Positions 751-61,788 of a stretch of 64,000 nt of DNA are shown here, in pieces. The notes beneath the pieces were generated by a model, which searched no databases, was not told the origin of the DNA, and saw only the letters and a list, made by a program, of their open reading frames with translations. The DNA lies in the IMG/VR virus record IMGVR_UViG_3300030108_006260, positions 1 through 64,000 of that record; one strand, 5' to 3'. The number at the start of each line of letters is the position of its first letter. Position 1 is the stretch's first letter. The position numbers and the translations under genes are program-made.

Positions 751-767
751 CTACTATCAGAAGGGTT
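751..767 (-). promoter_or_regulatory. phage promoter-like motif copy (consensus TAACCCTTCTCATAGTAG)
   Basis: Plus strand ctactatcagaagggtt, directly upstream of the ATG at 745. Confidence 0.7.
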
Positions 768-769
768 GT

Positions 770-1378
770 TCATCCTGGAAGAGACTTGGGTAGGAGAGGA
801 AGGAACCCGCCGCCACTACCAAGACGCGGAGCCAAGAACGGAGCCATCTCTTCTACCTTATCCTTGAGGTGATCAGTTTCCGCCATAAAGGACTCGAAGG
901 TGTCTTTCTCTCCGTACACTTGAGTGGACAGGTCTAGGTCATACGTCTCAATGACATACCTGGAAATAAGTAGACCCATCAGAGGGGCGCCACCGCTCAT
1001 GCAGTCGTAGAAGTTATAGCCAATCCAGTGGGAAAGAGCTGTAACAGGATCTAGTTTAAGAAGGTCTACTGACACTTGAATGGACTTGGTGAACTTAACA
1101 AACCCGTCAATATCATGAGTAAGTTTGCTTACATTCTCGTCATAAACAGAACCCGCGTACATAGTTCGGATACCTTCTCTTTCGTCCACTTCTCTCGATA
1201 GGACAAGGTGAGGATCCATAAACGGTCCAGTGTTTAGACGAACACCTGCCTCTTTGGCTGCATTAATGATGCTCTCTTCACGGGAGATCTCTCTGTCAGA
1301 ATAGAAAACCCACTCATCGTTGTTCGACATGTTAGAGAACTCGACGATGTTACGCCACTTTTTAGGTTTGGATAGCAT
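770..1378 (-). CDS. hypothetical protein (202 aa)
   Basis: Long ORF tiling the coding strand. Confidence 0.7.
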   Translation of the reverse strand: MLSKPKKWRNIVEFSNMSNNDEWVFYSDREISREESIINAAKEAGVRLNTGPFMDPHLVLSREVDEREGIRTMYAGSVYDENVSKLTHDIDGFVKFTKSIQVSVDLLKLDPVTALSHWIGYNFYDCMSGGAPLMGLLISRYVIETYDLDLSTQVYGEKDTFESFMAETDHLKDKVEEMAPFLAPRLGSGGGFLPLLPKSLPG

Positions 1379-1389
1379 ACTTCTTTTTC

Positions 1390-2058
1390 CTACTTAGGAA
1401 TTACAACGTGTATTTTTTCGAGACCAGCAGACTGTGCTCCCTTGAGACGGTGATGCCCGTCGATAAGAGTCATGTCTGAATCCACCAGAACTCCTGCTGT
1501 CCATGCCTTTTCTTTAACGAGGTAAGAATAGTGGTAGTCGCGAGCGGCACGCAGCTTTTCTTTGTTTGCGCGTACATCTTCGATGGGAACGAGTTTCGTA
1601 TGCCACTTCTCTACAGAAGCAAGGCGCTCAAGAACATACCCGTACTCCATAAATAGAAGTCGGCGCACCCTATCCGCACTGCTTCCTGCCTGAAAGTACT
1701 GAGCGTCATCAGTAGCCTTAGAGACAAAATCGTGGGTGAAAGAAGTAGAAGAGACCTCTTCACCGTAGTACCCAGGAAGAATAGATACGTTAATATCACT
1801 CTTGTTGATCGACTTACGCATGTACAAGGAAAAGAACCGGAACAATAGGATCCTATCCAGCATAGACATTCCCTTAGTTCCGTAGAACGATCGAGTGGCC
1901 TCGTATGTGTTATAGGGGGACATTTCTTCCAAGTCCCACCCTACAACTCTAGTACACCTACACATGTAGTCACACTCTCCCGTGCAAGGAGAATATCGCA
2001 CATCTAGGTTGATTGATCGTCTCCCACGAAGAGAGGAGTCGTTGAACTGCATGGTCAT
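1390..2058 (-). CDS. protein with C-terminal ParB/sulfiredoxin-like domain
   Basis: C-terminal LIDGHHRL motif typical of ParB-N/Srx domains. Confidence 0.65.
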   Translation of the reverse strand: MTMQFNDSSLRGRRSINLDVRYSPCTGECDYMCRCTRVVGWDLEEMSPYNTYEATRSFYGTKGMSMLDRILLFRFFSLYMRKSINKSDINVSILPGYYGEEVSSTSFTHDFVSKATDDAQYFQAGSSADRVRRLLFMEYGYVLERLASVEKWHTKLVPIEDVRANKEKLRAARDYHYSYLVKEKAWTAGVLVDSDMTLIDGHHRLKGAQSAGLEKIHVVIPK

Positions 2059-2063
2059 GTCAG

Positions 2064-2080
2064 CTACTATCGGAAGGGTT
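2064..2080 (-). promoter_or_regulatory. phage promoter-like motif copy
   Basis: ctactatcggaagggtt, 5 nt upstream of the ATG at 2058. Confidence 0.7.
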
Positions 2081-2085
2081 GTGGG

Positions 2086-2313
2086 CTACTGCTTCTTCTG
2101 TTTTTCCCACTTAGAGAAGACCAAGTCTGAAGATGTCCGAGCATCCAGATTCACGTGAGCATAGCAGCGGTAGGGAAAGGATTTAACCACAAAGGGAACG
2201 TCTTCATGTGGAATGCGAACTTCTCGTGTGGGGCACCACCCCGGTACTATGGCAGTATAATTATTTCTGCCCTTTGAATAGATACGAACTAGCTGACGGT
2301 ACGTCTTAGGCAC
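2086..2313 (-). CDS. small hypothetical protein
   Basis: ORF on the coding strand. Confidence 0.6.
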   Translation of the reverse strand: MPKTYRQLVRIYSKGRNNYTAIVPGWCPTREVRIPHEDVPFVVKSFPYRCYAHVNLDARTSSDLVFSKWEKQKKQ

Positions 2314-2457
2314 CAGGTACTTTTCCTTCTACCCAGTCCATGAGGTCCTTAGGCAGGCTCCGATACACAATCTCTTGTCCTTGGTCTCGTGCGTGGTCGA
2401 TTCCGTACTTCATTCCACGGGATATCCCAAGGTCCTGATACACTACCGTCCGCAAAA

Positions 2458-3093
2458 CTAGTTACCTCTGATTCTATCCCAGCTACGAAGAACAGTGCTT
2501 CTGACTTCATCCAATACACCAATGCCGCGAGTATTTTCATTATGAATAAGCATGAAGGAAAGACCTTGCTCCAGGGCATCATCAATAGCACGGTGGCTAT
2601 GAGGCAACATGGATGCCCATCTACGGGGCCAGCTCCCTTTACCTGAGTGTAGGACGGTCTTTTTCCTCATGCCGGACACGTAGCTCCTCATGTCCAGACA
2701 ACTAAATCCAAAAGGACTTCCCCCAGTAAACTTCTTCATGTACCAGTACATGAACGTAAAATCAAATCCGGAGGGGTAGCAAACCATTACCTTTTTACCA
2801 ACAAAGGAGTTTACCCAGGTTACGTACTCAGTCATGGCAACAGAGGGGTCTACTCTATTTTGAAGTACGTACGCAAGGGCCTCTGGTTCCTTGTCCCAAA
2901 AGTTGACTGTAGTATCCACATCAGGGTAAGCGCCTGGAAGAGGTAGTGTGTTTCTCTCGAAAGATCCTACTACCTCACCTGACTCCCTGAAAACTACAGA
3001 AGCGAAAGAAAGCATAGAGTTCTGGCCAGGGAGAGGGCCGTCTGTTTCTATGTCAGTAGAGAAATATAGGACCTCATTCTTCGAATTACTCAC
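2458..3093 (-). CDS. DEDD/DnaQ-like 3'-5' exonuclease
   Basis: STDIETDGP (ExoI), FDFTF (ExoII), HRAIDDA (ExoIII) motifs. Confidence 0.85.
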   Translation of the reverse strand: MSNSKNEVLYFSTDIETDGPLPGQNSMLSFASVVFRESGEVVGSFERNTLPLPGAYPDVDTTVNFWDKEPEALAYVLQNRVDPSVAMTEYVTWVNSFVGKKVMVCYPSGFDFTFMYWYMKKFTGGSPFGFSCLDMRSYVSGMRKKTVLHSGKGSWPRRWASMLPHSHRAIDDALEQGLSFMLIHNENTRGIGVLDEVRSTVLRSWDRIRGN

Positions 3094-3097
3094 AGAT

Positions 3098-3316
3098 CTA
3101 TACCTCTTCTACAATCCTATAATGGCATCCTCCCTTGAGGACTTTGACGTCTTGTCTTCCGCCTAAGATCACTCTGACTACTTTGCCATCGAGTGAGCCT
3201 GTGCACTGAGCTACTTCGCATAGTGCCTTAGAGAAGCATGCTGCATTGAATGTCCCATCATTACCGCCATAAATCTTGGTGGCACGCTCCATACAGAGCC
3301 TTATTATGTCATTCAT
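3098..3316 (-). CDS. small hypothetical protein
   Basis: ORF on the coding strand. Confidence 0.6.
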   Translation of the reverse strand: MNDIIRLCMERATKIYGGNDGTFNAACFSKALCEVAQCTGSLDGKVVRVILGGRQDVKVLKGGCHYRIVEEV

Positions 3317-3374
3317 TTATCATGCTTTCTTGAATCCTACCTAGTGTAAGAAAGTATGTCGGATGTAGAAGTCA

Positions 3375-3644
3375 CTACTTCCATTCAGGGTAAGAGGACT
3401 TGATTGCGTTGTGTACTAACTTCCAAACACTGTATGCGTTTCTGGCATAGTCTTCGACTCTACCTACCCGTGTGGTTTTGATGTCGTTCCAAGATCGGGC
3501 AGGGTTAGAACCCTTTCTGGCAACCTTGACGTCGTAGTTGCCTCTTCTTCCGTGGGTGGTACCGTCATTGGCTATGTACATCCTGCCAATTTCGGAAACC
3601 TTTCCTGTTATGGCAGACCACAACTCTATCTTAACAACAATCAT
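3375..3644 (-). CDS. hypothetical protein (start moved to MIVVKIELW, downstream of the tRNA)
   Basis: The ORF-track N-terminus overlaps tRNA-Leu; ATG at 3644 fits. Confidence 0.65.
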   Translation of the reverse strand: MIVVKIELWSAITGKVSEIGRMYIANDGTTHGRRGNYDVKVARKGSNPARSWNDIKTTRVGRVEDYARNAYSVWKLVHNAIKSSYPEWK

Positions 3645-3664
3645 TCTCGTCTCAGAATATAAAA

Positions 3665-3752
3665 TGGTGGGGCCGGTGGGATTCGAACCCACATGACTTA
3701 TTAGGTCGGAAGATTTTAAGTCTCCTGCGTCAGCCAGTTGCGCCACGACCCC
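3665..3752 (-). tRNA. tRNA-Leu(TAA)
   Basis: Cloverleaf GGGGTCG...; anticodon arm GGAGA-CTTAAAA-TCTTC; long variable arm; GGTTCGAATCC T-loop; encoded ACCA. Confidence 0.95.
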
Positions 3753-3781
3753 TAAACTTGTACTAAATGATACTAGCGCAT

Positions 3782-4069
3782 CTACTCCGTTGTGTCCAGG
3801 CTTTTTACGTTAAAAGCAATGTCGGTCCACCTGCCCACTCTAGATCTACCTTTTGATTGGTCCTCCTCAAGCGCGATCCAACCAATAGAGGCAAGGGCAT
3901 CCATAGCCCACACGTTAGGTGCCACACAGTGGGAGTACAGATAATAGTCAGGCTCGTCAGATTCAGGGTATTGGCTCGACACCGTACAATGGTGGGAAAC
4001 CATACCAGCAAGGGCCAGAGCCATGTCCTCCCTGAACTTTTTATCTTGGCGTTCTTTTTGGTCTGTCAT
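3782..4069 (-). CDS. hypothetical protein
   Basis: ORF on the coding strand. Confidence 0.65.
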   Translation of the reverse strand: MTDQKERQDKKFREDMALALAGMVSHHCTVSSQYPESDEPDYYLYSHCVAPNVWAMDALASIGWIALEEDQSKGRSRVGRWTDIAFNVKSLDTTE

Positions 4070-4096
4070 TCACTACAGCGATTCGTGTAAAGAAGC

Positions 4097-4465
4097 TCAC
4101 TTTGACTCTAGTAGTCTGAGGGTCTTTTCCAGAAGCTCCAGGTTTTCCTTCTGGTCCTTACTGGTCTTCTGGATCATGACACGGATTCCCTCTGCTAGGG
4201 CATAGTTTGAAGGAGTATCAAAGAAGTACCCAGCACAATCTCTGTCGAACTCATCACCGTAAATGCGTAGCGCATCTCCGGGTGTGTAGCATGCTTCGTA
4301 GTCCGCTCGGGCGAAGAAAAACGGCATCCTTTTACCTCCAGGACCCGAGAGGGTCTCTACAGAGTAGTGGCCGCTCTCGTTGTTCCTCATAAGGCGGAAG
4401 GTTGCGATTTCCTGGTCTTCTTCCTCAAGGTTGTTTTCTACTTGGGTACTATTTTCTACGGTCAT
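4097..4465 (-). CDS. hypothetical protein
   Basis: ORF abutting the upstream gene. Confidence 0.7.
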   Translation of the reverse strand: MTVENSTQVENNLEEEDQEIATFRLMRNNESGHYSVETLSGPGGKRMPFFFARADYEACYTPGDALRIYGDEFDRDCAGYFFDTPSNYALAEGIRVMIQKTSKDQKENLELLEKTLRLLESK

Positions 4466-5269
4466 TTAATATTCTCCATCTTTATCTACAGATCGTGATT
4501 CACTCCTCTTCTTCCACAGAAGAGTGTTGACCTCATGCTTAGCATTTACATGATCAATCAGATGCCCCAAGATCGTGTCTAGGAAATCAAATTCCTCATT
4601 CTGGGCAGCTTCGTTTAGGAGCTGACTTACATCGTTAATGTCCATGTACGTGAGTTCTTTAATCTTATTAGGACGCACAAACAGGAGTGGGTGACTGTTT
4701 TTTGAATTCTTGTGGTCCTCTACTGCCTTAGACATACCATTGGAATACTCGCAGAGATCTTTGAGGAACAATGATGGGTCTCGGAGAATTTTACCTACGA
4801 AGAGAACAGGAGCATTTCTCCTGAAGATTGCCACAGGTACGTAACATTCTGCCGCATACATTTCCTGGTGGGAACCTTCTTCACAGAAAGGTCCGAACGT
4901 AACAACTGACTCTCCGTTTGCGTCCCATCCACCTTTGTCCCAGCAGGACCTGTATTCGAATATCTCTTGATGAGGTGTGTAGGCTCTCGTTAGGATACTA
5001 GGATCCGCCTTACCCTCACCGTAGTTTTCCTTATCGTACTCTTTGAGCATCTCTTCGTAAGGAAGGGCAGCGTCGTCCTTTGGAGTGAATAGCCAGACAC
5101 TGTGGACTGCATCAGCTGCTTCGTCATCCCAGTACTGGGCAACGAAAAGAACACCCGTTTGTGCCTCCTCGTTGCCCTCGAATACCAAATCCGCGTATGC
5201 CTTTGCAGGACCCGTTAGCCACTTATTTCGAAGAATCTCTGCTTCTTCGACACTCATACTTCTATTCAT
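4466..5269 (-). CDS. hypothetical protein, paralog of 49131-49970
   Basis: Shared block (W/Y)LTGP.K.Y...V.QY(W/Y).DEA.DAVH; start placed at the ATGA overlap with the upstream stop. Confidence 0.75.
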   Translation of the reverse strand: MNRSMSVEEAEILRNKWLTGPAKAYADLVFEGNEEAQTGVLFVAQYWDDEAADAVHSVWLFTPKDDAALPYEEMLKEYDKENYGEGKADPSILTRAYTPHQEIFEYRSCWDKGGWDANGESVVTFGPFCEEGSHQEMYAAECYVPVAIFRRNAPVLFVGKILRDPSLFLKDLCEYSNGMSKAVEDHKNSKNSHPLLFVRPNKIKELTYMDINDVSQLLNEAAQNEEFDFLDTILGHLIDHVNAKHEVNTLLWKKRSESRSVDKDGEY

Positions 5270-5928
5270 GATCTGAACCAATCTACTTGTTGACTGCGTT
5301 GTTCTTGACTTAGCTTGTGCATGTAGCACTCTACTACAAGAGGAGTACCCTCTCTCATTTTTTCTTTAGCCCACATAAATCCGAAAGAACCATCCTCGGT
5401 CATCGGTTGGTGGGTGTCATGTCTCCCCTGGTTGGTGGACACGTGTACCTCGACAATGTTGTCGTAATCTTGAAGGGACTCCCACGTTTTCATCTCCATG
5501 GCCCCTTGCTCTAGTTGTATAAAAATGTGAGACACATCAACAACAAGAGGAAGATTTGCTCTCATTGCCTCTGTGACAGAGCCCTCTCCTTCTCCTGTAC
5601 CCATCCCGTAAGATCCGTACATTGTTTCAAAAGATCGGTCCTGCTCCATCCACTCCGACGTAAGAGGACGTGTCGGGGGATGTACGGTGGCACCTTCCAT
5701 AGCGACACACGTATTTCCTTCCCACACTTTTCTCTTTATTCTATCCCATTCAAATCCGTGGTGTACCAGGTAAGGAATGTTTTTATCGAGGAACTTTTCC
5801 TTAAAGTCTGATAGTGGAACGTTTCCTGGAGTGAGCTGGATCCCATCAGGAGACAAGGACATAAGGTCGTCCACGGCCTCCTCAGATCTTCTACCTTGTA
5901 GGCATGACAGCGCTAAGTACAGCATCAC
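5266..5928 (-). CDS. possible TIM-barrel (AP endonuclease/xylose isomerase-like) protein
   Basis: Pattern VVDVSHIFI...VEVHVSTNQGRHDTH resembles metal-binding D-H / E-H / D-H of AP2-like barrels; fold inferred. Confidence 0.45.
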   Translation of the reverse strand: MMLYLALSCLQGRRSEEAVDDLMSLSPDGIQLTPGNVPLSDFKEKFLDKNIPYLVHHGFEWDRIKRKVWEGNTCVAMEGATVHPPTRPLTSEWMEQDRSFETMYGSYGMGTGEGEGSVTEAMRANLPLVVDVSHIFIQLEQGAMEMKTWESLQDYDNIVEVHVSTNQGRHDTHQPMTEDGSFGFMWAKEKMREGTPLVVECYMHKLSQEQRSQQVDWFRS

Positions 5929-6314
5929 ACAATCACAAATCTACTAGCGTCATAGACCCGGTCCCCTGCGGTGTCCCAGGGGTATACTGTGACCTCTTCA
6001 CCTCGGAGGTTCCTGTATTTGGACCCAGCACTAACTAGCATCTTTCCTATTCCTCGTCTGCGCATTTTTCTCTCTACGTAGACACTCCCTATCCTGTTTT
6101 GAGGGGAGTTTTTAATAATGCAGAACCAGCCCACAATGGTTCGGCTGTTATCCTCAGCCACCCAAACGTGCTCTATCTTACCTGAGTAAAGAGATTCATA
6201 CATCAACGAATGATCTCGCCCCCATCCTCCGTTCGTTAGGAACCGGAGGCGGTTGTGCACAACAGGGTCGTTATACACCCGTTTGAGTGAAATCTTTCGT
6301 ACTTTGATAGACAC
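5925..6314 (-). CDS. GNAT-family acetyltransferase
   Basis: Motif A VYVERKMRRRGIGKML. Confidence 0.8.
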   Translation of the reverse strand: MSIKVRKISLKRVYNDPVVHNRLRFLTNGGWGRDHSLMYESLYSGKIEHVWVAEDNSRTIVGWFCIIKNSPQNRIGSVYVERKMRRRGIGKMLVSAGSKYRNLRGEEVTVYPWDTAGDRVYDASRFVIV

Positions 6315-6317
6315 AGG

Positions 6318-6590
6318 CTACTCCTGAAGTGCTTCTAGCGTCTTTAGAATGTACTCTGCCTTAGCAGAGCCACTTTTTCCAAGGGGCTGTCCTGTATGGA
6401 TGTCACACCAGTCCGAATAGCTGACTGCATTGTCTAGACGGACAGCAGTGATACGCTCACTGAAAAACAGAAACTTCCTCTGTGTCCAGGATACAACCGC
6501 ATTCTTTCCAGATCGAATGAGAGAAATCTTAGAGGATTTTTCTTCCTCGTGTGTGACAATCTCTGCTTTGGTTCGATATGCCATTACCAC
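6318..6590 (-). CDS. hypothetical protein
   Basis: ORF on the coding strand. Confidence 0.6.
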   Translation of the reverse strand: MVMAYRTKAEIVTHEEEKSSKISLIRSGKNAVVSWTQRKFLFFSERITAVRLDNAVSYSDWCDIHTGQPLGKSGSAKAEYILKTLEALQE

Positions 6591-7099
6591 TCGGAACAGG
6601 CAATGTACCCAGCGTCAGACACAGATGTCAAGGGAATTTCGTAATCTTCCTCGCCCTCGTCATACCTAATTTTAACGTTACTCGCCTCAGGAAAGCTTAG
6701 TTCTTCGATGACCACATCATAGAAGCTGGTTAGACCCAGGTCTTCCGCAACGTAGCCAGAGTCCTCCCAGGATTTCTTCATGAGGGCAGTTGCTTCTTCG
6801 AGGGAAGGAGCAATGATCCAATGGAGGGCCCCGTCATCAGCACGCCAGTACTTCCGGCTCTTATTTTCTTTGGACAAAGCTGGAAGTCCGTAGTTATCGG
6901 GAAGGGGTTCTGACCAGAAGTAACCCCGCCACTTGCTAGGAGTGTAGAGTCCTCCCGAGGGAAGCCCAACAACGGTAATAACGTCACCAGGATCTCCTAG
7001 TACACCCATCGTAGGGTACCTGCCTGGAGCCTCTGGCATGGCCAGTGTCCACTTACCCGAGTGAAATCTGGTCCACTCTTCTTTTTGTTTTCGGTTCAT
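6584..7099 (-). CDS. hypothetical protein
   Basis: Start MNRKQKEEW follows an AGGA SD and a promoter motif. Confidence 0.7.
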   Translation of the reverse strand: MNRKQKEEWTRFHSGKWTLAMPEAPGRYPTMGVLGDPGDVITVVGLPSGGLYTPSKWRGYFWSEPLPDNYGLPALSKENKSRKYWRADDGALHWIIAPSLEEATALMKKSWEDSGYVAEDLGLTSFYDVVIEELSFPEASNVKIRYDEGEEDYEIPLTSVSDAGYIACSEW

Positions 7100-7119
7100 T
7101 GGGGTCCTTTCTTCCTTTT

Positions 7120-7137
7120 CTACTATGAGAAGGGTTA
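7120..7137 (-). promoter_or_regulatory. phage promoter-like motif copy
   Basis: ctactatgagaagggtta. Confidence 0.75.
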
Positions 7138-7764
7138 CCACATAGTGGAGCTGTCTTTGACCTCAAACCCATGAGGAGGCTCGCCATATACTTCCATGGC
7201 AACCGTCATAAACTTCTTGAGTTCGTGGCATCTGTTCTTACGTCTTGCGTAGTCATGCTCGGCGTATTCAATTTTTCGGTGAAGGTACTTATTTTCTCCT
7301 TCTCGCCACTCCTCAAAAGTGATGTTTTTTGGTTCGTCGTTAGTAGTCATCCTCAAATTCCAGGCTATGCCCTCTTTGAGTTGCTTCACTACTGTTTCAT
7401 GGAACTCACGAAGAACTTCAGGTACGGCCGATGCCTGCTCCTCTATCTTGTTCTTCAAAGACTCAACCCTATTGATTTCTTCTTGGATACGAGATCCTAG
7501 ACTATCGTGTTCCCCGTTTCTTTCAACAAGGTTTTCCTTCCACTCTTCTCGGAGCTGACTTTCTGTCTTGGCAAGAAAAGCATCAAGGTCTGCGATTGCT
7601 TCCTTGATTTTCTCTTTCTCGAAGTCCTCATTCCAGTTATAAAAAACAATGGGGTCTTCTCTTCCAGCATCCCTCCGGTTCAAACCGATGTGGTGCCAAA
7701 AGTACTCTCTGACAGTGGTGATGCTGCCGTCAGCAACTGCGTGTGAGAATCCGGTCCAGGACAT
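7135..7764 (-). CDS. hypothetical coiled-coil protein
   Basis: Long charged helical ORF. Confidence 0.7.
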   Translation of the reverse strand: MSWTGFSHAVADGSITTVREYFWHHIGLNRRDAGREDPIVFYNWNEDFEKEKIKEAIADLDAFLAKTESQLREEWKENLVERNGEHDSLGSRIQEEINRVESLKNKIEEQASAVPEVLREFHETVVKQLKEGIAWNLRMTTNDEPKNITFEEWREGENKYLHRKIEYAEHDYARRKNRCHELKKFMTVAMEVYGEPPHGFEVKDSSTMW

Positions 7765-8637: not shown

Positions 8638-8755
8638 AAGACTTTCTATTAGATGTATTGTTGGTAGATCTGGCAGGACTTGCACCTGCACTCCCGTGAG
8701 GGAACTGGGGTTTGAATCCAGCGAGTCTTCTAATTTCTCCACAGATCCTTGTCGG

Positions 8756-8843: not shown

Positions 8844-8844
8844 G

Positions 8845-8917: not shown

Positions 8918-8945
8918 TTAAGCAAAGGTACTGTTACACAGATTA

Positions 8946-10100: not shown

Positions 10101-10118
10101 TTACTATCAGAAGGGTTA
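10101..10118 (-). promoter_or_regulatory. phage promoter-like motif copy
   Basis: ttactatcagaagggtta upstream of rIIB. Confidence 0.7.
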
Positions 10119-12258: not shown

Positions 12259-12276
12259 CTACTATGAGAAGGGTTA
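12259..12276 (-). promoter_or_regulatory. phage promoter-like motif copy
   Basis: ctactatgagaagggtta upstream of rIIA. Confidence 0.75.
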
Positions 12277-15102: not shown

Positions 15103-15120
15103 CTACTATGTGAAGGGTTA
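15103..15120 (-). promoter_or_regulatory. phage promoter-like motif copy
   Basis: ctactatgtgaagggtta. Confidence 0.75.
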
Positions 15121-16443: not shown

Positions 16444-16834
16444 CGTGTTCCCTACTATCAGTAGGGTCGCTCTTGGAGGTGTCCTTAAAGTACTGGAGGT
16501 CTAGGTGGAAGAAAATAACCTCCTCTACCCCTACTGAGGCATGCTCCTCGATAAGGGGAACGAGCTTTTCTACGATCTCATACCGTATCCTAGCACGCTG
16601 CTTTAGCTTCCTCACCTTCAGAAGACCCTCTACTCTCCAGTTTGTGGTACCCCCAACTACACGAAGGGTCTCAAACTCTGAAGGAACACCCTTGAGTTTG
16701 GTGTGTAGTCGTCCGGGAAAGGAATCGAGCTTTATGTTGGCGCCAAAGGACGCCCACATTCTTTCCTTAGTTGGATCGGGCATTTGTATACTTGGAGAAG
16801 AAGGCTTCCTCCTCTCCTCGATCTTTAAGCCCAA
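16427..16834 (-). CDS. hypothetical protein
   Basis: ORF on the coding strand; true start may be downstream of the listed one. Confidence 0.55.
   Translation of the reverse strand: MGLKIEERRKPSSPSIQMPDPTKERMWASFGANIKLDSFPGRLHTKLKGVPSEFETLRVVGGTTNWRVEGLLKVRKLKQRARIRYEIVEKLVPLIEEHASVGVEEVIFFHLDLQYFKDTSKSDPTDSREHDDEDD
16452..16468 (-). promoter_or_regulatory. phage promoter-like motif variant
   Basis: ctactatcagtagggtc, 8 nt upstream of the ATG at 16443. Confidence 0.55.
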
Positions 16835-20798: not shown

Positions 20799-20816
20799 CT
20801 ACTATGGGAAGGGTTA
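20799..20816 (-). promoter_or_regulatory. phage promoter-like motif copy
   Basis: ctactatgggaagggtta. Confidence 0.7.
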
Positions 20817-28091: not shown

Positions 28092-28109
28092 CTACTATGG
28101 GAAGGGTTA
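28092..28109 (-). promoter_or_regulatory. phage promoter-like motif copy
   Basis: ctactatgggaagggtta. Confidence 0.75.
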
Positions 28110-28887: not shown

Positions 28888-28905
28888 CTACCATGAGAAG
28901 GGTTT
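28888..28905 (-). promoter_or_regulatory. phage promoter-like motif copy
   Basis: ctaccatgagaagggttt. Confidence 0.65.
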
Positions 28906-32168: not shown

Positions 32169-32186
32169 TTACTATAAGAGGGGTTG
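32169..32186 (-). promoter_or_regulatory. phage promoter-like motif variant
   Basis: ttactataagaggggttg. Confidence 0.5.
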
Positions 32187-36914: not shown

Positions 36915-37353
36915 CTGGTTCTTCCTCTGGACCTAGTTCAGACCGTTCAAGGCGATACCGGAAAACGGCAAGAAGTCCCTCTAATGTAGAAAGACCAACC
37001 ATAACTTCCCACATGTTGTAGGGGCCCTCACCCTTAATAATAGAAGAGAATTCTTCCATTGCCTCTACCAGAGGAGGTGCTGCTCGGGACACAAGATCTT
37101 GTGACTCGGGTTTCATCATAGAAGACATAGCGGCAGACATGGGTTTAGACGTTGCCTTGAACGAAGACAGGTCTCCTCCCTCTTCAAGGTAGGAAGAAAC
37201 TAGGTCAGCAAGTATCTTCTCCTTCCCGTCTCCGATGTCTGTGTCACCTAACAGGCTGTCAAGGAGGTTAATAGCGGAGGGGACTGTGTCTAACAAACGA
37301 TTATGTGTCATGGCTATTTTTAGTATCTGTAGGGTTAAAGAGTAAAGGCTCAC
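36904..37353 (-). CDS. hypothetical helical protein
   Basis: ORF on the coding strand. Confidence 0.6.
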   Translation of the reverse strand: MSLYSLTLQILKIAMTHNRLLDTVPSAINLLDSLLGDTDIGDGKEKILADLVSSYLEEGGDLSSFKATSKPMSAAMSSMMKPESQDLVSRAAPPLVEAMEEFSSIIKGEGPYNMWEVMVGLSTLEGLLAVFRYRLERSELGPEEEPDEI

Positions 37354-47850: not shown

Positions 47851-47868
47851 CTACTATGAGAAGGGTTA
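47851..47868 (-). promoter_or_regulatory. phage promoter-like motif copy
   Basis: ctactatgagaagggtta. Confidence 0.75.
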
Positions 47869-50864: not shown

Positions 50865-50938
50865 AACACTACCCCCAGTGTACAAACACTATCATAAAAA
50901 GGGTTCAGAAGCTAGTTAAAGATAGGAAAGAGGTCACA

Positions 50939-54146: not shown

Positions 54147-54164
54147 TTAGTATGTGAAGGGTTT
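54147..54164 (-). promoter_or_regulatory. phage promoter-like motif variant
   Basis: ttagtatgtgaagggttt, 5 nt upstream of the ATG at 54141. Confidence 0.6.
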
Positions 54165-55283: not shown

Positions 55284-57140
55284 TCAACTAGCAGTAATAG
55301 CCCAGGCAGGCTTCTTCAGTAGGTCGGTCTGTAGGATCTGGTCAACGAGCATAACCCGAGGGGTACGCGCTCCCTGAGAAGACACGCCAACAGGAGTGGA
55401 GGCAATAAGGTTGTGTAGGGTTCGCGGAACCTGGTACGGATCACTAAACACTGACTGCTCAACCTCAAAGCAAGGAATCTCCAGACTAGCTGCTGTCTCC
55501 GTCACGCAGTGACGCCAAGAACTTCCTACCTTAAGAAGACCAAAAGCCACAGGGTTCAATCCTGACTGTTGAACTGCACGAGGGAAGTTAGCAGCACCCT
55601 CATCACCTACGAAGATGAACAGTGCATCCTCATCTGCGCTAGGAGGGTACTTGGAAAGAAGACGAACGCCAGTAGCGTAATCGGTTCCTCCTCCGGCGCC
55701 ATACCCACGGAAGGCGGCACGTACACCTGCGTGGGAAGCATGCTGGATCTTGATCTCACGTGCTACCGTGTTGAAAACACACACGTGAACTCTGTCCAAT
55801 GGGAATGCCTGAACAAAGTTTTCCAGACATGCCTTTGCTTCATCCAGGGACTGCTGCATAGACCCCGAGATGTCTACGAAGAAGTAGATGCGCATGTTGC
55901 GGGAAACTTCTTCCACCTTCTTCTGTAGGGCAGCGTCTGCGCCTTCCTTCAGAACCTCGACAACTTCTCGTCCCTTTACGTTACGAGCAATGTTACGGGA
56001 ACGTTGGTCTTCTGCTGCACGGACTGCTGAACTCCACCGTTCCTTGATATCCTGTACCTCCAAGAGTCCAAGAGTCTCAAGGGTAGGAGTAGCAATAACA
56101 AGGTCCTTGTCAGACAAACACCCTGACTCAATGGCAGCAGCCATGACTGCGCGGGTAACACCAACCGATACAGGAACACGTGAAGTGATGACCTTGTAGG
56201 AAGGCTTCTCGGAAACAATCTTCTGACAGATCTGTTCCTCCGTTAGATCGTCCCAGGAGTCCTGCTTCTGAATCTGGACACCAAGAGCAACCTCTCGGCG
56301 ACCGTCAGGAGCTTGCTTCTGCTTCCAACGAAGAATCTGAAAGAAGTTTTCCCCTTCGGGCTTGTACCCGATGATCTGAGAGAGTCGAATAACACTCTTA
56401 CGGAAACCAGCCTTGACAAGACCCTGTAGAACAGGAGGATTCTGCTCGCGGAACCGCAACCACTTCTCTACAGCCTTGGGCCAGCGACCCAAGAAAGGGT
56501 TACGATTAGATCGACCAAATCCGAGCTGACGGTTGACCTCTGCAACACCGTCCTGAATGAGGACCTCACGGACACGAAGTAGCATCTTCGGGTTGAAGTC
56601 ACGTCGTTCCGAGCGTAGAAGTAGCATAGCCTCTCCCACGTCACGGTAGTCCTCGTCGTAGAAGAGAACTTCACCGTTCTCTACCTCAGGGTCTCCCTTT
56701 CGGGACTGGCACAGCAAGAAGGCAGCAAGAATAACCTTAAGGTCGCGATGCTCCTGGCCAAACGCATAGGAGGCCCATCGTGCAGCAAACTCATTGTCCA
56801 TTCGCCACAACTCTGCCACCTGGTTATACATCCAGTGAGCAACCTCAGGAAAGATTCCTGCTGGACGGTACTGTGCGACTACACTACGACCTTCCGTGAT
56901 AGATCCATCCTCCCCAAGAACACCTACACGAGTGCGGGTGACACGGCGGCCACTCTTAGAGAGAGCGTAGACAATCTTCTGCCCGTTCTCTTCTTTGTGG
57001 GTTACAGGGGACCAGGAAACGCCGATACGTGTGCGTCCGTCTTGCTTTACCATTCCTGGACGGTTGTGGTAAAGGTGGTCGGTATGACTTAGAAGCGACT
57101 GTAGAATTACCTCAGCCGGTCCCTTACTTTCTTGTTCCAT
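55284..57140 (-). CDS. TROVE/Ro60-like helical domain plus C-terminal vWA domain
   Basis: Clear MIDAS FFVDISGSM, GGGTDY, FVGDE; helical N-region with DNEFAARWASYA, GRWPKAVEKW, IRLSQ..YKP recalling Ro60 blocks (fold inferred). Confidence 0.65.
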   Translation of the reverse strand: MEQESKGPAEVILQSLLSHTDHLYHNRPGMVKQDGRTRIGVSWSPVTHKEENGQKIVYALSKSGRRVTRTRVGVLGEDGSITEGRSVVAQYRPAGIFPEVAHWMYNQVAELWRMDNEFAARWASYAFGQEHRDLKVILAAFLLCQSRKGDPEVENGEVLFYDEDYRDVGEAMLLLRSERRDFNPKMLLRVREVLIQDGVAEVNRQLGFGRSNRNPFLGRWPKAVEKWLRFREQNPPVLQGLVKAGFRKSVIRLSQIIGYKPEGENFFQILRWKQKQAPDGRREVALGVQIQKQDSWDDLTEEQICQKIVSEKPSYKVITSRVPVSVGVTRAVMAAAIESGCLSDKDLVIATPTLETLGLLEVQDIKERWSSAVRAAEDQRSRNIARNVKGREVVEVLKEGADAALQKKVEEVSRNMRIYFFVDISGSMQQSLDEAKACLENFVQAFPLDRVHVCVFNTVAREIKIQHASHAGVRAAFRGYGAGGGTDYATGVRLLSKYPPSADEDALFIFVGDEGAANFPRAVQQSGLNPVAFGLLKVGSSWRHCVTETAASLEIPCFEVEQSVFSDPYQVPRTLHNLIASTPVGVSSQGARTPRVMLVDQILQTDLLKKPAWAITAS

Positions 57141-57320: not shown

Positions 57321-58259
57321 TCAATCACTTTCTGAAAAAAACTCTATCTCTTTCTCGTGTAAGGGAGAAATGATGTTAGCACATCCCTTCAAGAATGCAA
57401 GGTGATTACTGTAATCTACCTGTTGACTTCCCTGACCTGTTGTTGGTACCCATGTACGTCTAAGCATCTTCATCCAGTGCTGAATGAAAATAAGTTGACT
57501 AAGTCTATTGAAAGCTAGGGGGCTATCCGACTCCATAGAAGGAGTAGGAGCGTCAGGGTCAAACCCCGATCTTTTTAGAAGATCTAGGATAGGGCCCACT
57601 TCGCTGTTTTCACTACCCTCCAATAGAGTTGCCAAATCCTTTTGGGTACGTAACGTGGAAGCTACCCAAGAGCTTCTTCCTGTGCTAGGAAAAGAGTAGC
57701 TGAAGATTCCTGATATACTAGAGATAGGAATGGAATCATGCTCACGGGCCAACTCAGGAGAGTAGCTGATCGAGCTATATCCAGCGTCATAAACTAGGGG
57801 CATGCCTAGGGCCATGTCCCACACGTCACGACGAGCCATGATCATCTCAACTGGAAGAGTCCTAGAGGGGTCTTCCTTGGTACGACTCTTATCATCAATA
57901 AAAAGAGCAAACTCATGCAAAAGAGTAAAAAGAACAGTAAGGTCGTTGACTGGATCCTTCCAATCAAAAGAGGACCACTCTGCCATTCTGTTCTCAACAG
58001 GATGGCGTTGACTATTAATGGTGTCTAGCCACTGCTTGATTATCACCTCTTCCCCCTGGATGGTCCCTTCCTTAGCTTCCGGCCTTCCGTAAGAGTCGTA
58101 CTCTCCGTAGAGGGGTAGCACAAAGGGTACCCACAAGTCAGTAGGGTGCACACGTCCGCTGTTATCAAACGGAGACTTGTGAATAAGAAGGGCAACAATA
58201 GGATCCCCTGCCTCGATTGGCAGGTTCGACATAAAGCACGTCTCTGTCCAACAACCCAT
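57321..58259 (-). CDS. hypothetical phage protein (312 aa)
   Basis: MGCWTETCFMSNLPI...LYGEYDSYG; long ORF. Confidence 0.75.
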   Translation of the reverse strand: MGCWTETCFMSNLPIEAGDPIVALLIHKSPFDNSGRVHPTDLWVPFVLPLYGEYDSYGRPEAKEGTIQGEEVIIKQWLDTINSQRHPVENRMAEWSSFDWKDPVNDLTVLFTLLHEFALFIDDKSRTKEDPSRTLPVEMIMARRDVWDMALGMPLVYDAGYSSISYSPELAREHDSIPISSISGIFSYSFPSTGRSSWVASTLRTQKDLATLLEGSENSEVGPILDLLKRSGFDPDAPTPSMESDSPLAFNRLSQLIFIQHWMKMLRRTWVPTTGQGSQQVDYSNHLAFLKGCANIISPLHEKEIEFFSESD

Positions 58260-58293: not shown

Positions 58294-58368
58294 TGGCAGT
58301 CCCGGTAGGATTCGAACCTACGACCTTCGGCTTAGGAAGCCGCTGCTCTTCCTCTGAGCTACGAGACC
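58294..58368 (-). tRNA. tRNA-Arg(CCT)
   Basis: GGTCTCGTAGCTCAGAGGAAGAGC...CGGC-TTCCTAA-GCCG...GGTTCGAATCC...GCCA. Confidence 0.92.
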
Positions 58369-58380
58369 TCGTTACCTTCT

Positions 58381-58398
58381 CTACCATGAGAAGGGTTT
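58381..58398 (-). promoter_or_regulatory. phage promoter-like motif copy upstream of tRNA-Arg(CCT)
   Basis: ctaccatgagaagggttt. Confidence 0.7.
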
Positions 58399-59580: not shown

Positions 59581-59585
59581 GGAAC

Positions 59586-59840
59586 CTAAGAACGACTAGA
59601 CTTTACAAGGTGAAGCCACTCACTCATCGAATAAAATGAAGGAACACCCTCGTCTGAAAGATGATACCAGCCGTCTTCTTTTCTGGAAAGGAGCAGAAGC
59701 TCGGATCTCTCTTCCAGGGAAAGGCAGCTGTTCTTACCTAAAGCAGCTCCCCATAAGAAAAAAGAAGTATCTTGCTCCCATCCATCTGGGCTTACTTTAG
59801 GTACCATCTTTCGCATTAAGTGCAATAAACTATTACTCAT
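59586..59840 (-). CDS. small hypothetical protein
   Basis: ORF on the coding strand. Confidence 0.55.
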   Translation of the reverse strand: MSNSLLHLMRKMVPKVSPDGWEQDTSFFLWGAALGKNSCLSLEERSELLLLSRKEDGWYHLSDEGVPSFYSMSEWLHLVKSSRS

Positions 59841-60022
59841 TCTAGATGAGCGTCTTCATTTAAGACGCAGTAACATGCGTTCTCGTCCCAGTGAGCATCA
59901 GGAAGACATCGCTCAGGGGCACATTCAGCGGGAACTTCTCTACATGTTCCTCCGAAACAAGAAGTGCGAGTAGAAGCAGAACCACAGCCAATAAGAATTA
60001 AGCTTAGAAGAATCTTATACAT
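59837..60022 (-). CDS. small Cys-rich lipoprotein
   Basis: Lipobox LIGC; six further Cys. Confidence 0.6.
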   Translation of the reverse strand: MYKILLSLILIGCGSASTRTSCFGGTCREVPAECAPERCLPDAHWDENACYCVLNEDAHLE

Positions 60023-60956
60023 ATGAACTAATATAGTGTCTCATCCTATCCCCTTTTTTAGATAGGAAGTCACGAGGATAGCACTCTGGATGGACGTTGT
60101 CCAGGGCAGTCAGAACTATTTCCTTGTTTTTAGGATTTGTCATATTCATGAAGAAGGTCCTTATCGTGAAAAGGAATGACATACCAAGAGGAACGACAGT
60201 CTGACGCTCAAATCTACAGAATATATTCTGATCCGGGGGCTCCCAGGTCCAAGAGTCTTCAATGCCCAAAGACGGATGTATGTTTAGTGTCTGGTGGGAC
60301 CGGAAAGACAGTGCACCTACGCGCTCCACCGGTTCAGGCATAGACGAAATGCTTCTTACCATCTTGGAGGGGTCTTTGATCACAAGAGATCCGTCTCGAT
60401 TAACGACTTCCTCATGAATCGAATGAAAAGATTTATCCCTGGCCCAATCAACAGACCAATGACTGGCTGATGCCAAGGCGATCTCAACAATTCCGTCATC
60501 CTTGAAGAGAACCAGGTCACACTCAACCTGCATAGAAACCCATCTAAATAAGGTTGGGAGACCTCCTAGAGTGGAGTTGCAGCGTAACGTCTCAAAGGTA
60601 GCGGGATCAAAGTCTATTGTTTCTCTTGAAAGAGTACACGTAAGACGGTGCGCACCATCTACTTCTTTAATATTAAAGAGACGGGGATGCTTAGTTGTCA
60701 AGTCCTCTACTAGGTACTTATAACAGGAATACCTATCAAAATAAGGGTCTACTAAAGAATAGTCATCAAAAGAGGCTTCTGCTTGGGAAATATTGTTCTT
60801 CCTAAACTGGTTCCAGTAGGTGTCAAACATGAACACGGTGTTTCTCCTATCTGGAAGGTTAGAGAACTTGGTCATCTTAACGGAGGACCGTGGGACACTT
60901 CCACTATGGAGCGGACATATTTTTAGGTAATCATCCATTATACGTCTGTACCTCAA
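60015..60956 (-). CDS. DUF3445 / heme-dependent oxidative N-demethylase alpha-subunit-like protein
   Basis: QVECDLVL, ASASHWS..W..KSFHSIH..V, RFERQT, FLFTIRTF match the family pattern. Confidence 0.65.
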   Translation of the reverse strand: MRYRRIMDDYLKICPLHSGSVPRSSVKMTKFSNLPDRRNTVFMFDTYWNQFRKNNISQAEASFDDYSLVDPYFDRYSCYKYLVEDLTTKHPRLFNIKEVDGAHRLTCTLSRETIDFDPATFETLRCNSTLGGLPTLFRWVSMQVECDLVLFKDDGIVEIALASASHWSVDWARDKSFHSIHEEVVNRDGSLVIKDPSKMVRSISSMPEPVERVGALSFRSHQTLNIHPSLGIEDSWTWEPPDQNIFCRFERQTVVPLGMSFLFTIRTFFMNMTNPKNKEIVLTALDNVHPECYPRDFLSKKGDRMRHYISSYV

Positions 60957-61179
60957 CTGGTTTAAGTCTGTTAGAACTGAGCCATGAGCTTACGGTATTT
61001 GTAATATCGTGTTCTTCACTTTCCACTTCCAAGTAGACAAACCATTCCCCACAGGAAGAAGAGACGAAAATATCAACAACAGGTCCCGATGGACGCAGTT
61101 CCTCAGCCATCTCCTCGCTTATTGGGTATATTTGAACCTCTAAAGTTCTAGTACGCATAGTGCGACCTCTTATCAACAT
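60931..61179 (-). CDS. small hypothetical protein
   Basis: ORF on the coding strand. Confidence 0.5.
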   Translation of the reverse strand: MLIRGRTMRTRTLEVQIYPISEEMAEELRPSGPVVDIFVSSSCGEWFVYLEVESEEHDITNTVSSWLSSNRLKPVEVQTYNG

Positions 61180-61765
61180 TCTTAGGAAGGTTAAAGTAAG
61201 AGTATACCTGCGAGTTCGGTTCTGAAAAAACTAGAGAATGAAACAACTCCCAAGTAGCATCCCATACGTGAGGTATATTATTATCCCACAGCTCAGAAGA
61301 TACAGCGTCTTGGTCCAACCAGAACACAAAAACAGGGTCCATAGACGGATACGGAGGCTGCTGAAAAACAGCTAGGCTTAGCTTGAAGCCGTAGTTCGAA
61401 TTTCCCATACCAAAGAAAAACTCAGGAGAAGATACCAATCGAATGATCTCTTCTCTGGTCGCAAGTGTGGAAAACGTGTGAGCCTCTGACAAGGACGGTC
61501 CAATGTCTAGATCGTAAGCAAGGGAAACTTCTCTTACGATGCTAAGAAGCTGAGTAGGTCCTTCTGATGCAGAAATTCCATGGTCCTGGATGCTACGTGA
61601 TGCGTTCCTACATTCTCGCCTAGACATCGTGCACATCTTGTGGACTCTGTCCGCGCTACCTACGCCCTCTTTTCTGGCAAAGAAGAGAAACTCTATCTCA
61701 TTCTTTACTGAGGAAAGAAGAGGGCTATCCAGGAAATGTGTAAGGGCTCTGACGTGGGGGTCCAT
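61148..61765 (-). CDS. hypothetical protein
   Basis: ATG 6 nt downstream of a promoter motif. Confidence 0.65.
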   Translation of the reverse strand: MDPHVRALTHFLDSPLLSSVKNEIEFLFFARKEGVGSADRVHKMCTMSRRECRNASRSIQDHGISASEGPTQLLSIVREVSLAYDLDIGPSLSEAHTFSTLATREEIIRLVSSPEFFFGMGNSNYGFKLSLAVFQQPPYPSMDPVFVFWLDQDAVSSELWDNNIPHVWDATWELFHSLVFSEPNSQVYSYFNLPKNVDKRSHYAY

Positions 61766-61771
61766 GTGCTT

Positions 61772-61788
61772 CTACTATCAGAAGGGTA
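61772..61788 (-). promoter_or_regulatory. phage promoter-like motif copy
   Basis: ctactatcagaagggta. Confidence 0.65.

What the first reader, a model, noticed from the sequence alone, without database searches (positions are those of the whole stretch)
751..61788. About 15 copies of an 18-bp promoter-like motif, many positioned for leaderless translation
Sense consensus TAACCCTTC(T/C)(C/G)ATAGTAG, at 751, 2064, 7120, 10101, 12259, 15103, 16452, 20799, 28092, 28888, 32169, 47851, 54147, 58381 and 61772. It is always oriented with the genes and always at gene boundaries, with no TTGACA partner. In at least seven cases the ATG follows after only 5-8 nt with no room for an SD (745, 2058, 16443, 32160, 47845, 54141, 61765), implying transcription starts at or near the AUG. 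The other copies have a short SD-containing leader. Inference: a compact promoter for a phage-encoded sigma factor or RNA polymerase, or a host alternative sigma, defining a regulon that includes rIIA/B, the E2-like gene and tRNA-Arg(CCT).
Basis: partly seen in the sequence, partly recalled or inferred. Interest (0 to 1): 0.6.

Follow-up and report, generated by a model that had tools for sequence, protein, structure and literature searches.

The report
Compact promoter of a huge marine phage
The repeated 18-bp motif is real and is almost certainly the main promoter of a 340-kb uncultured marine phage that has no RNA polymerase of its own but carries its own sigma factor; some copies sit so close to the ATG that the mRNA should have no leader.

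Summary
All 15 reported copies are present, and there are two weaker ones. All lie on the gene strand at gene boundaries (14 hits against 0.17 expected by chance).

The window belongs to a roughly 340.4-kb circularly closing phage genome, which I rebuilt from Tara Oceans contigs. That genome holds 70 strong copies on the gene strand and none on the other strand.

About 35 copies outside the window form single-gene cassettes: intrinsic terminator, motif, 5'UTR hairpin, Shine-Dalgarno site, ATG. One copy drives an isolated homing-endonuclease gene that points against its neighbours. Both facts argue for a promoter rather than a processing site.

The 3' half reads (C/G)ATAnT, like a -10 element. 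A pyrimidine-purine pair at nucleotides 5 and 6 after the motif, the hairpin starts and the leaderless ATGs all place the transcription start about 6 nt after the motif. This is sigma-70-family geometry, not the T7 type.

No T7-like or beta-prime polymerase domain was found in this genome or in three complete relatives. All of them encode a conserved RpoD-like sigma factor and carry their own variant of the motif.

Best reading: host core polymerase directed by the phage sigma factor. A host sigma factor is not excluded, and there are no transcription-start data. I rate it a new variant of a known kind.

The parts
751..768 (-). Motif copy. Predicted transcription start (TSS) at 745, which is the A of the ATG of ORF 155-745 (leaderless).
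2064..2081 (-). Motif copy. ATG at 2058, 5 nt after the motif (leaderless), ORF 1390-2058.
7120..7137 (-). Motif copy. Its TAA is the stop codon of ORF 7135-7764. A 20-nt leader with SD precedes the ATG at 7099.
10101..10118 (-). Motif copy. Its TAA is the stop codon of rIIA. It drives rIIB (ATG 10061) and the tRNA cluster at 8662-8917.
12259..12276 (-). Motif copy. Its TAA is an upstream stop codon. It drives rIIA (ATG 12227) through a 31-nt leader with SD.
15103..15120 (-). Motif copy. Its TAA is an upstream stop codon. A 28-nt leader precedes the ATG at 15074 (DUF2786/DUF7168 protein).
16452..16469 (-). Degenerate motif copy inside the 3' end of an overlapping upstream ORF. ATG at 16443, 8 nt after the motif.
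20799..20816 (-). Motif copy. Its TAA is an upstream stop codon. A 63-nt leader precedes the ATG at 20735.
28092..28109 (-). Motif copy. Its TAA is an upstream stop codon. A 32-nt leader with SD precedes the ATG at 28059.
28888..28905 (-). Motif copy (ATGGTAG variant). A 16-nt leader with a GGAGG SD precedes the ATG at 28871.
32169..32186 (-). Motif copy with 2 mismatches. ATG at 32160, 8 nt after the motif (61-aa ORF).
37320..37337 (-). ATG at 37311, 8 nt after the motif.
47851..47868 (-). Motif copy. Its TAA is an upstream stop codon. ATG at 47845, 5 nt after the motif (leaderless).
50889..50906 (-). A 24-nt leader precedes the ATG at 50864.
54147..54164 (-). Motif copy (ATACTAA variant). 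ATG at 54141, 5 nt after the motif (leaderless, 311-aa ORF).
58381..58398 (-). Motif copy 12 nt upstream of tRNA-Arg(CCT) at 58294-58368. The same unit continues into ORF 57321-58259 and tRNA-Arg(TCT).
61772..61789 (-). Motif copy. ATG at 61765, 6 nt after the motif (leaderless, 205-aa ORF).

Best explanation
**What it is.** The motif is the main promoter class of a roughly 340-kb uncultured marine phage.

**Anatomy.**
- Positions 11-16, (C/G)ATAnT, act as a -10-type element.
- Positions 2-9, AACCCTT(C/T), act as a proximal upstream element that takes the place of a -35 box.
- Transcription starts at the 6th nucleotide after the motif, a purine preceded by a pyrimidine.

**Consequences for the mRNA.** Where an ATG sits 5-8 nt after the motif, the mRNA has no leader or a leader of 1-3 nt. 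Elsewhere the transcript opens with a short leader carrying an SD site. In the early-gene cassettes outside the window a 5'-terminal hairpin precedes the SD.

**Who reads it.** The enzyme is the host's multisubunit RNA polymerase core. The specificity factor is most likely the phage's own RpoD-like sigma factor (record coordinates 188458-189672, outside the window).

**Shown versus inferred.** Shown here: the motif, its statistics, its anatomy, its conservation in relatives, the absence of recognisable polymerase genes, and the presence and domain make-up of the sigma factor. Inferred: the start-site position and the pairing of this sigma factor with this motif.
For: **The motif is real and strand-specific.**
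- There are 70 sites of at least 16 bits on the gene strand, 0 on the other strand and 0 in Markov controls.
- About 27 bits sit in 17-18 contiguous bp, with nothing conserved further upstream.

**It behaves as a promoter.**
- 26 of 70 sites have a GC hairpin plus T tract within 80 nt upstream, against 24 of 2000 random positions.
- The cassette region has 33 terminator-like sites against 13.2 +/- 3.7 expected.
- The cassette layout is visible.
- One copy lies 6 nt before the ATG of a homing-endonuclease gene flanked by genes on the opposite strand.

**The geometry is of the sigma-70 family.**
- A at position 12 is present in 69 of 70 sites, and T at positions 13 and 16 in 70 of 70.
- Y at nucleotide 5 and R at nucleotide 6 after the motif occur in 51 of 70 sites.
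- Ten ATGs lie 5-8 nt after the motif.
- The 5'UTR hairpin begins at nucleotide 6-7 after the motif, and 5 of its 6 pairs show compensatory changes.

**No phage polymerase was found.**
- PF00940, PF00623 and PF00562 are absent from the record.
- The missing 100 kb carries no polymerase family among its precomputed hits.
- Three complete relatives lack PF00940 and PF00623. The T7 positive control scored 1e-109.

**A phage sigma factor is present and conserved.**
- It has Sigma70_r2 and aligns with primary sigma factors through regions 2-4.
- Its predicted fold matches E. coli sigma-70.
- Orthologues of 37-68% identity occur only on huge metagenomic contigs.

**The motif travels with the sigma factor.** Relatives G001, G002 and G003 (GC 55-61% against 47% here) share the sigma factor. 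Each has its own one-strand variant: AACCCTGCCGATAnTAG, AACCCTGGCCATACTAG and AAGCCCnnCGATACTAA.

**It does not look like a host consensus.**
- T is under-represented at the position equivalent to -12 (9 of 70).
- There is no TG extended -10 motif.
- Among 185,579 bacterial species genomes the exact pattern gives only 67 scattered single hits.
- No canonical TTGACA/TATAAT promoter class exists anywhere in the phage.
Against: - No transcription start has been measured. The only RNA run that holds the phage gave contigs away from any motif.
- The sigma gene lies in a motif-free block next to SSB, RNR and UvsX. It has no motif within 2 kb in any relative. The sigma factor could therefore serve a different (late) promoter class, with a host sigma factor reading this motif.
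- If the phage sigma factor reads about 70 promoters in front of typically 'early' genes (small ORFs, rII, tRNAs), something else must express or deliver the sigma factor first. No such promoter class was found.
- An upstream element only 4 bp from the -10 hexamer is not where region 4 of a canonical sigma factor binds. What reads AACCCT is unknown.
- Cassette paralogy inflates some counts, namely the Y-R pair and the hairpin.
Confidence: 0.55

Rival explanations
1. The motif is an early promoter read directly by a host sigma factor (primary or alternative) of an unknown marine host. The phage sigma factor serves another, probably late, gene class.
For: - The genes behind the motif look like classical early genes: small ORFs, rIIA/B, tRNAs and nucleotide metabolism.
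- No other early promoter class was found.
- The sigma gene sits in a motif-free block.
- The -10-like half is compatible with any group 1-3 sigma factor.
Against: - There is no -35 box and no TG extended -10 motif.
- T is depleted at the -12 equivalent.
- The motif family is kept in phages whose GC content differs by 10-14 points, which suggests different hosts, while they all share the phage sigma factor.
- No bacterial genome among 185,579 species carries the exact motif more than once.
Confidence: 0.25
2. The motif is the promoter of a phage-encoded RNA polymerase that sequence profiles miss. This could be a T7-like single-subunit enzyme or a non-canonical one delivered by the virion. Transcription would start at the final G of the motif.
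For: - The element is contiguous, about 27 bits, and has no -35 partner, as with T7-type promoters.
- It shares 11 of 18 identities with T7 phi1.1B in ungapped alignment.
- The final base is a purine in 68 of 70 sites.
- Several proteins of 800-2200 aa have no annotation.
Against: - PF00940, PF00623 and PF00562 are absent from this genome. PF00940 and PF00623 are absent from three complete relatives. A T7 control worked.
- Six large unannotated proteins have no sequence match to any solved polymerase.
- A start at the final G would give 6-9 nt leaders without an SD site for ten genes.
- A start at the final G would place the conserved Y-R pair and the hairpin starts off the 5' end.
Confidence: 0.1
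3. The motif is not a promoter. It is an RNA-processing site, an operator, or a signal for translational coupling between genes.
For: - It lies at gene boundaries and often overlaps the upstream stop codon.
- It is strictly strand-specific.
Against: - Terminators lie directly upstream in 26 of 70 copies, so a new start is needed there.
- One copy precedes a lone gene in antisense orientation that no read-through transcript can reach.
- The motif has no internal dyad symmetry. Its conservation pattern matches a -10 element.
Confidence: 0.05

Closest known systems
-35-independent (extended -10 type) sigma-70-family promoters, including phage promoters read by host polymerase without a -35 box (my own knowledge)
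   Same: A -10-like hexamer with invariant A and T at the two key positions, a specificity element immediately upstream of it, no -35 box, and a start about 7 nt after the hexamer.
   Different: No TG at -15/-14. Instead an 8-bp AACCCTT(C/T) block lies 4 bp upstream of the hexamer, and the -12 equivalent is G or C rather than T.
Phage sigma factors that redirect host core polymerase: SPO1 gp28, phiEco32 gp36, T4 gp55, and the sigma-bearing jumbo phages without a polymerase described in PMC7824862
   Same: The phage has no polymerase but has its own sigma factor. A conserved phage-specific promoter lies in front of many genes.
   Different: From memory, SPO1 and phiEco32 promoters are bipartite and the T4 late promoter is TATAAATA. 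Here the sigma factor is a full RpoD-like protein, and the promoter fronts early-looking genes. The pairing of this sigma factor with this promoter is not shown.
T7/T3/SP6 single-subunit polymerase promoters
   Same: About 18 contiguous conserved bp, a purine at the last base, purine-rich sequence downstream, and 11 of 18 identities with T7 phi1.1B.
   Different: No T7-like polymerase in four genomes. The anatomy places the start 6 nt further downstream.
phiKZ-type and N4-type early promoters read by injected virion polymerases (my own knowledge)
   Same: Many copies of one strongly conserved promoter in front of small early genes.
   Different: No polymerase subunit genes were detected. The motif has a sigma-type -10 element.
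Leaderless mRNAs of Actinobacteria, Deinococcus and archaea (my own knowledge)
   Same: The -10-like element ends 7-8 nt before the A of the start codon, so the transcript would begin with AUG.
   Different: Only 10 of 70 units are of this kind. The others use a clear SD site, so the host is not a mainly leaderless translator.

Membership tests
Sigma-70-family promoter | A -10 hexamer with conserved A at position 2 and T at position 6 | tested here: met
   Position 12 is A in 69 of 70 sites and position 16 is T in 70 of 70.
Sigma-70-family promoter | Start site 6-9 nt after the hexamer, usually a purine preceded by a pyrimidine | tested here: inconclusive
   Y at nucleotide 5 and R at nucleotide 6 after the motif in 51 of 70 sites. 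This coincides with the leaderless ATGs and the hairpin starts. No experimental start site exists.
Sigma-70-family promoter | A -35 hexamer about 17 bp upstream, or a TG extended -10 motif | tested here: not met
   No conservation upstream of the motif. Positions 8-9 read T(C/T), not TG. A different proximal element, AACCCTT, is present instead.
Sigma-70-family promoter | A sigma factor is available to read it | tested here: met
   An RpoD-like sigma factor is encoded at 188458-189672 of the record and conserved in the clade. That it binds this motif was not tested.
T7-like single-subunit polymerase promoter | The genome encodes a T7-like polymerase (PF00940) | tested here: not met
   Absent from the record, from the walked 100 kb and from three complete relatives. 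The T7 control was positive.
T7-like single-subunit polymerase promoter | Contiguous conserved block of about 18-23 bp ending at a +1 G | tested here: inconclusive
   The block is present and its last base is G in 60 of 70 sites. Downstream anatomy points to a start 6 nt later.
Promoter of a phage multisubunit polymerase (phiKZ or AR9 type) | The genome encodes beta- or beta-prime-like subunits | tested here: not met
   PF00623 and PF00562 gave no hit at E <= 1 in the record. PF00623 gave none in three relatives. Very divergent subunits could escape these profiles.
T4-type late promoter (gp55) | TATAAATA at -10 in front of late structural genes | tested here: not met
   The motif differs and is absent from the structural blocks, apart from one homing-endonuclease gene.
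RNA-processing site | Lies within continuous transcripts, with no requirement for a new start | tested here: not met
   Terminators lie directly upstream in 26 of 70 copies, and one copy precedes an isolated antisense gene.

The most novel reading that the evidence does not exclude
A clade of uncultured aquatic phages of 340-424 kb has no RNA polymerase. It reprograms the host core enzyme with its own RpoD-like sigma factor, which reads a previously undescribed compact promoter.

That promoter has a -10-like hexamer plus an AACCCT block 4 bp upstream and no -35 box. It fronts about 70 transcription units. These include a battery of about 35 terminator-to-terminator single-gene cassettes and a set of truly leaderless mRNAs.

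These genes look early and no host-type promoter class exists. The sigma factor would therefore have to be made from very few unrecognised promoters, or be delivered with the virion. Virion delivery would be new for a sigma factor.
Probability: 0.3. Interest if true: 0.7.

Novelty: new variant of a known kind. Interest (0 to 1): 0.58.

Why it matters
Huge phages without a polymerase are common in metagenomes, but how they are transcribed is nearly unknown because none of this clade is cultured.

This motif gives a sequence-level map of about 70 transcription units, with predicted starts, terminators, 5' hairpins and leaderless genes. It also yields a testable pairing between a phage sigma factor and a promoter that lacks a -35 box.

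Three relatives keep the two outer modules and vary the 4-bp spacer, which gives a natural specificity series. If the pairing holds, it would provide a compact orthogonal sigma-promoter pair and an annotation tool for this phage clade.

Tried and rejected
- **Nucleotide search against phage records.** A megablast of 4 kb of the window against 50,697 phage records found nothing.
- **Exact motif scan of IMG/VR.** It gave 38 single, unrelated hits.
- **Protein pattern searches in IMG/VR.** Searches with rIIA and with a NUDIX protein found no relatives.
- **Reads.** Two RNA and two DNA runs were laid on 7000-12999. All are contigs, with no 5'-end information and no variants.
- **Strain comparison.** Across 44 variant alignments there were 2 differences in 7,832 bases and none in the motif, so microdiversity says nothing.
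- **Second promoter class.** A home-made EM motif search upstream of 49 genes outside the regulon found nothing above about 7 bits. Scans for TTGACA-N16-18-TATAAT were at chance level and strand-symmetric.
- **Cryptic polymerase.** Six large unannotated proteins have no sequence match to any solved polymerase. PHROGs and Pfam also give no polymerase match.
- **Fragmentary relatives.** G004 and G005 (36-42% complete) show no motif. They probably lack the early region, so they are uninformative.
- **Scan of 185,579 bacterial species genomes.** It gave 67 scattered single hits and no clue to the host.
- **T7-type reading.** I considered it because of 11 of 18 identities with a T7 promoter. I rejected it because there is no T7-like polymerase and the start geometry does not fit.
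- **'Moraphage' paper (PMC12619734).** It describes another polymerase-less large aquatic phage lineage with a sigma factor. I could not tie it to this clade.

Full report
**Observation**

None of 100 dinucleotide-preserving shuffles came near that number. Thirteen of these hits are reported copies, all on the - strand. The copies at 32169 and 54147 match the 17-mer core with two mismatches. A weight matrix adds two weaker copies at 37320 and 50889.

Nearly all genes of the window lie on the - strand, so every copy is in gene sense. Sixteen of 17 copies sit between ORFs. In eight of them the leading TAA is, or overlaps, the stop codon of the upstream gene. Over the whole genome that position is not conserved.

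Upstream of the motif nothing is conserved: every position from 18 to 41 nt before its 3' end carries less than 0.25 bit. The seven ATGs reported 5-8 nt after the motif are real and open ORFs of 61-311 aa, and an eighth follows the 37320 copy. rIIA and rIIB are confirmed. tRNA-Arg(CCT) begins 12 nt after the 58381 copy. The 'E2-like' gene could not be verified.

**What the window belongs to**

The window is the first 64 kb of a 240,443-bp IMG/VR record labelled 'provirus' and estimated 62% complete.

Exact-protein look-ups found the same phage on a 340,538-bp Tara Oceans contig. Genes from both ends of the record map to that contig with an offset of 340,416 bp, which means a circular or terminally redundant assembly.

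I walked the missing 100 kb with nine further look-ups. I then joined the pieces into a sequence that closes on itself at 340,416 bp. This is a bacteriophage, so no restriction on assembly applies.

The phage occurs in marine metagenomes of seven studies. Its major capsid protein is only 32-34% identical to those of cultured jumbo phages such as PaBG and Lu11.

**The motif genome-wide**

On the composite genome 70 sites score at least 16 bits on the gene strand, none on the other strand, and none in three Markov-simulated genomes. They span about 190 kb, from before a 619-aa gene at record position 123,330, through the whole window, to about 65 kb beyond the window's start. One outlier is discussed below.

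The conserved letters are A-A-C-C-C-T-T-(C/T) at positions 2-9 and A-T-A-n-T-A-(G/A) at positions 12-18. Positions 10-11 are variable.

**Why it is a promoter**

- About 35 copies lie in a region of small genes outside the window, and each forms the same cassette. The cassette runs: stop codon, GC-rich hairpin with a T tract, motif, 5-6 nt, a 6-bp hairpin, the sequence AAAGGA, 7-9 nt, ATG.
- A tool scan of 11 kb of this region finds 33 terminator-like sites against 13.2 +/- 3.7 expected. The strong ones are all on the gene strand just before a motif.
- By my own test, 26 of 70 motifs have a terminator-like element within 80 nt upstream, against 24 of 2000 random positions. A gene that follows a terminator needs a new start.
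- The outlier copy lies 6 nt before the ATG of a homing-endonuclease gene. That gene stands alone on its strand between capsid-module genes of the opposite strand. No read-through transcript can serve it.
- The 5'UTR hairpin shows compensatory changes in 5 of 6 pairs. It therefore acts as RNA, downstream of a start.

**Where transcription starts, and by what kind of enzyme**

The 3' half of the motif reads CATAGT, GATAAT, GATACT or GATATT. This is a -10-type hexamer in which the A at the second place and the T at the sixth place are present in 69 and 70 of 70 sites.

Nucleotide 5 after the motif is a pyrimidine and nucleotide 6 a purine in 51 of 70 sites. This is the usual -1/+1 pair of bacterial polymerases (established knowledge). 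That purine is the A of the ATG in the 5-nt cases and the first base of the hairpin in the cassettes.

A start there leaves 7 nt between hexamer and start, which is the ordinary bacterial distance. It makes the close-ATG mRNAs truly leaderless or nearly so. The paralogy of the cassettes inflates these counts, but the leaderless sites, which are not paralogous, show the same C-A pair.

**The T7-type alternative**

The consensus shares 11 of 18 letters with T7 promoter phi1.1B, read from the T7 record, and it ends in a purine. However:

- PF00940 finds nothing significant in the record.
- PF00940 finds nothing in three complete relatives, while it finds T7's own polymerase at 1e-109.
- Beta and beta-prime domains are also absent.
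- The precomputed Pfam hits of the walked 100 kb name no polymerase.
- Six large unannotated proteins match no solved polymerase by sequence.
- A start at the last G would also give ten genes a 6-9 nt leader without an SD site.

I therefore reject the T7-type reading. An unrecognisable polymerase fold cannot be excluded.

**The sigma factor**

The record encodes a 404-aa protein at 188458-189672 that has Sigma70_r2. A profile of its family aligns with primary sigma factors from region 2 to the recognition helix of region 4.2. The WWIRQ motif of region 2.3/2.4 is kept. The predicted structure matches E. coli sigma-70 over about 450 alignment columns.

Forty-two related clusters (37-68% identity) exist, all from metagenomes, on contigs of up to 424 kb.

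In this phage the region-4.2 helix is degenerate (EKENQ where relatives have ERLRQ). That fits a promoter without a -35 box, but this is my inference.

**Relatives**

Three complete IMG/VR genomes carry the sigma factor:

| Genome | Size | Motif variant | Copies found |
|---|---|---|---|
| G001 | 424 kb | AAGCCCnnCGATACTAA | a looser version |
| G002 | 392 kb | AACCCTGCCGATAnTAG | at least 45 |
| G003 | 388 kb | AACCCTGGCCATACTAG | at least 25 |

Their capsid proteins are 84-87% identical to this phage's. Their GC content is 55-61%, against 47% here.

In G002 and G003 the copies lie almost entirely on one strand. All three genomes show the same terminator, SD and leaderless arrangements.

The two outer modules are thus kept while the 4-bp spacer differs from phage to phage. 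A motif kept across such a GC range, together with a shared phage sigma factor, points to the phage factor rather than to a host-specific one.

Other observations point the same way:
- T is rare at the -12 equivalent (9 of 70).
- There is no TG motif.
- Among 185,579 bacterial species genomes the exact pattern occurs only as 67 scattered single hits.

**What remains open**

- The sigma gene lies in a motif-free block next to SSB, RNR and UvsX. It has no motif within 2 kb in any relative.
- I found no second promoter class, neither canonical nor new.
- The genes behind the motif look early. If the phage sigma factor reads the motif, the sigma factor must come first, either from promoters I cannot see or with the virion.
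- If a host sigma factor reads the motif instead, the phage sigma factor would serve late genes.
- Neither option can be settled without start-site or biochemical data. The one RNA run that holds the phage gave only contigs away from any motif.
- What reads AACCCT, only 4 bp from the hexamer, is unknown. Candidates are region 3 of the sigma factor, or the conserved 148-aa CxC...CPH protein whose gene directly precedes the sigma gene in this phage, with the same reading frame and GLCPHL signature seen upstream of the sigma gene in the relatives.

**Comparison and verdict**

The element works like a -35-independent sigma-70-family promoter. It fits the known strategy of polymerase-less jumbo phages that carry sigma factors (PMC7824862). 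It fails the membership tests for T7-type, phiKZ-type and T4-late promoters.

The motif itself, its proximal AACCCT module, the battery of single-gene cassettes and the leaderless subset have no described counterpart that I could find.

I rate it a new variant of a known kind. My confidence is about 0.9 that it is a promoter, about 0.8 that a bacterial-type polymerase with a sigma-70-family factor reads it, and about 0.55 that the factor is the phage's own sigma.

Noticed in passing
whole record; window 1-64000 is its first part: The 'provirus, 62% complete' record is really about 71% of a 340,416-bp circularly closing huge-phage genome. The same genome is present on a 340,538-bp Tara Oceans contig. 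No host flank was seen.
   Followed up: yes
outside the window: L080:1-11000 and L076:12000-20228 (about 34-50 kb beyond window position 1): About 35 single-gene cassettes, each with terminator, motif, a covarying 5'UTR hairpin, AAAGGA and ATG. Many are preceded by a repeated TCACTGCGAG block.
   Followed up: yes
record 123861-128009 (L020:862-5010), L079:3038-6097, record 213899-217195 and 218050-221763: DNA polymerase A and a helicase carry inteins with LAGLIDADG domains. The terminase (1098 aa) and portal (1237 aa) are oversized, with endonuclease-like inserts. In relative G003 the capsid gene is split into three pieces.
   Followed up: partly
record 229091-230617 and 232328-233992 (L019): Two HNH homing-endonuclease genes flank the major capsid gene. 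One has its own leaderless copy of the motif.
   Followed up: partly
window 46410-46482: Rfam finds a tenth tRNA that ARAGORN missed. ARAGORN calls the tRNA at 46700-46772 Asn with the unusual anticodon ATT.
   Followed up: no
L010:2304-2750 (record about 189672-190118), just upstream of the sigma gene: A 148-aa ORF with a CxC...CPH (SWIM-like) signature abuts the sigma gene here. It has no Pfam hit. The same frame with its GLCPHL signature lies upstream of the sigma gene in the relatives. It is a possible cofactor.
   Followed up: partly
L019:7150-7200 (about 90 nt upstream of the capsid ATG): A hairpin-containing block (CTTTAGGAG-N6-CTCCTCCCAA) is conserved upstream of the capsid gene in three phages. 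It occurs only once per genome. Its function is unknown.
   Followed up: partly
L064 compared with L065-L069 (window 1-10000 and beyond): Strains from different Tara samples are nearly identical in sequence. They differ by presence or absence of small genes between motif copies.
   Followed up: no
window 63781-63790: A run of 10 N (scaffold gap) inside the window. Three more lie elsewhere in the record.
   Followed up: no
window 17237-18499, 23780-25132, 40468-41496, 51166-52224, 55284-57140: Auxiliary genes in the regulon: an R2K ATP-grasp protein, two VWA-domain proteins, a GMP reductase/IMPDH-like protein and a JAB-domain protein.
   Followed up: no
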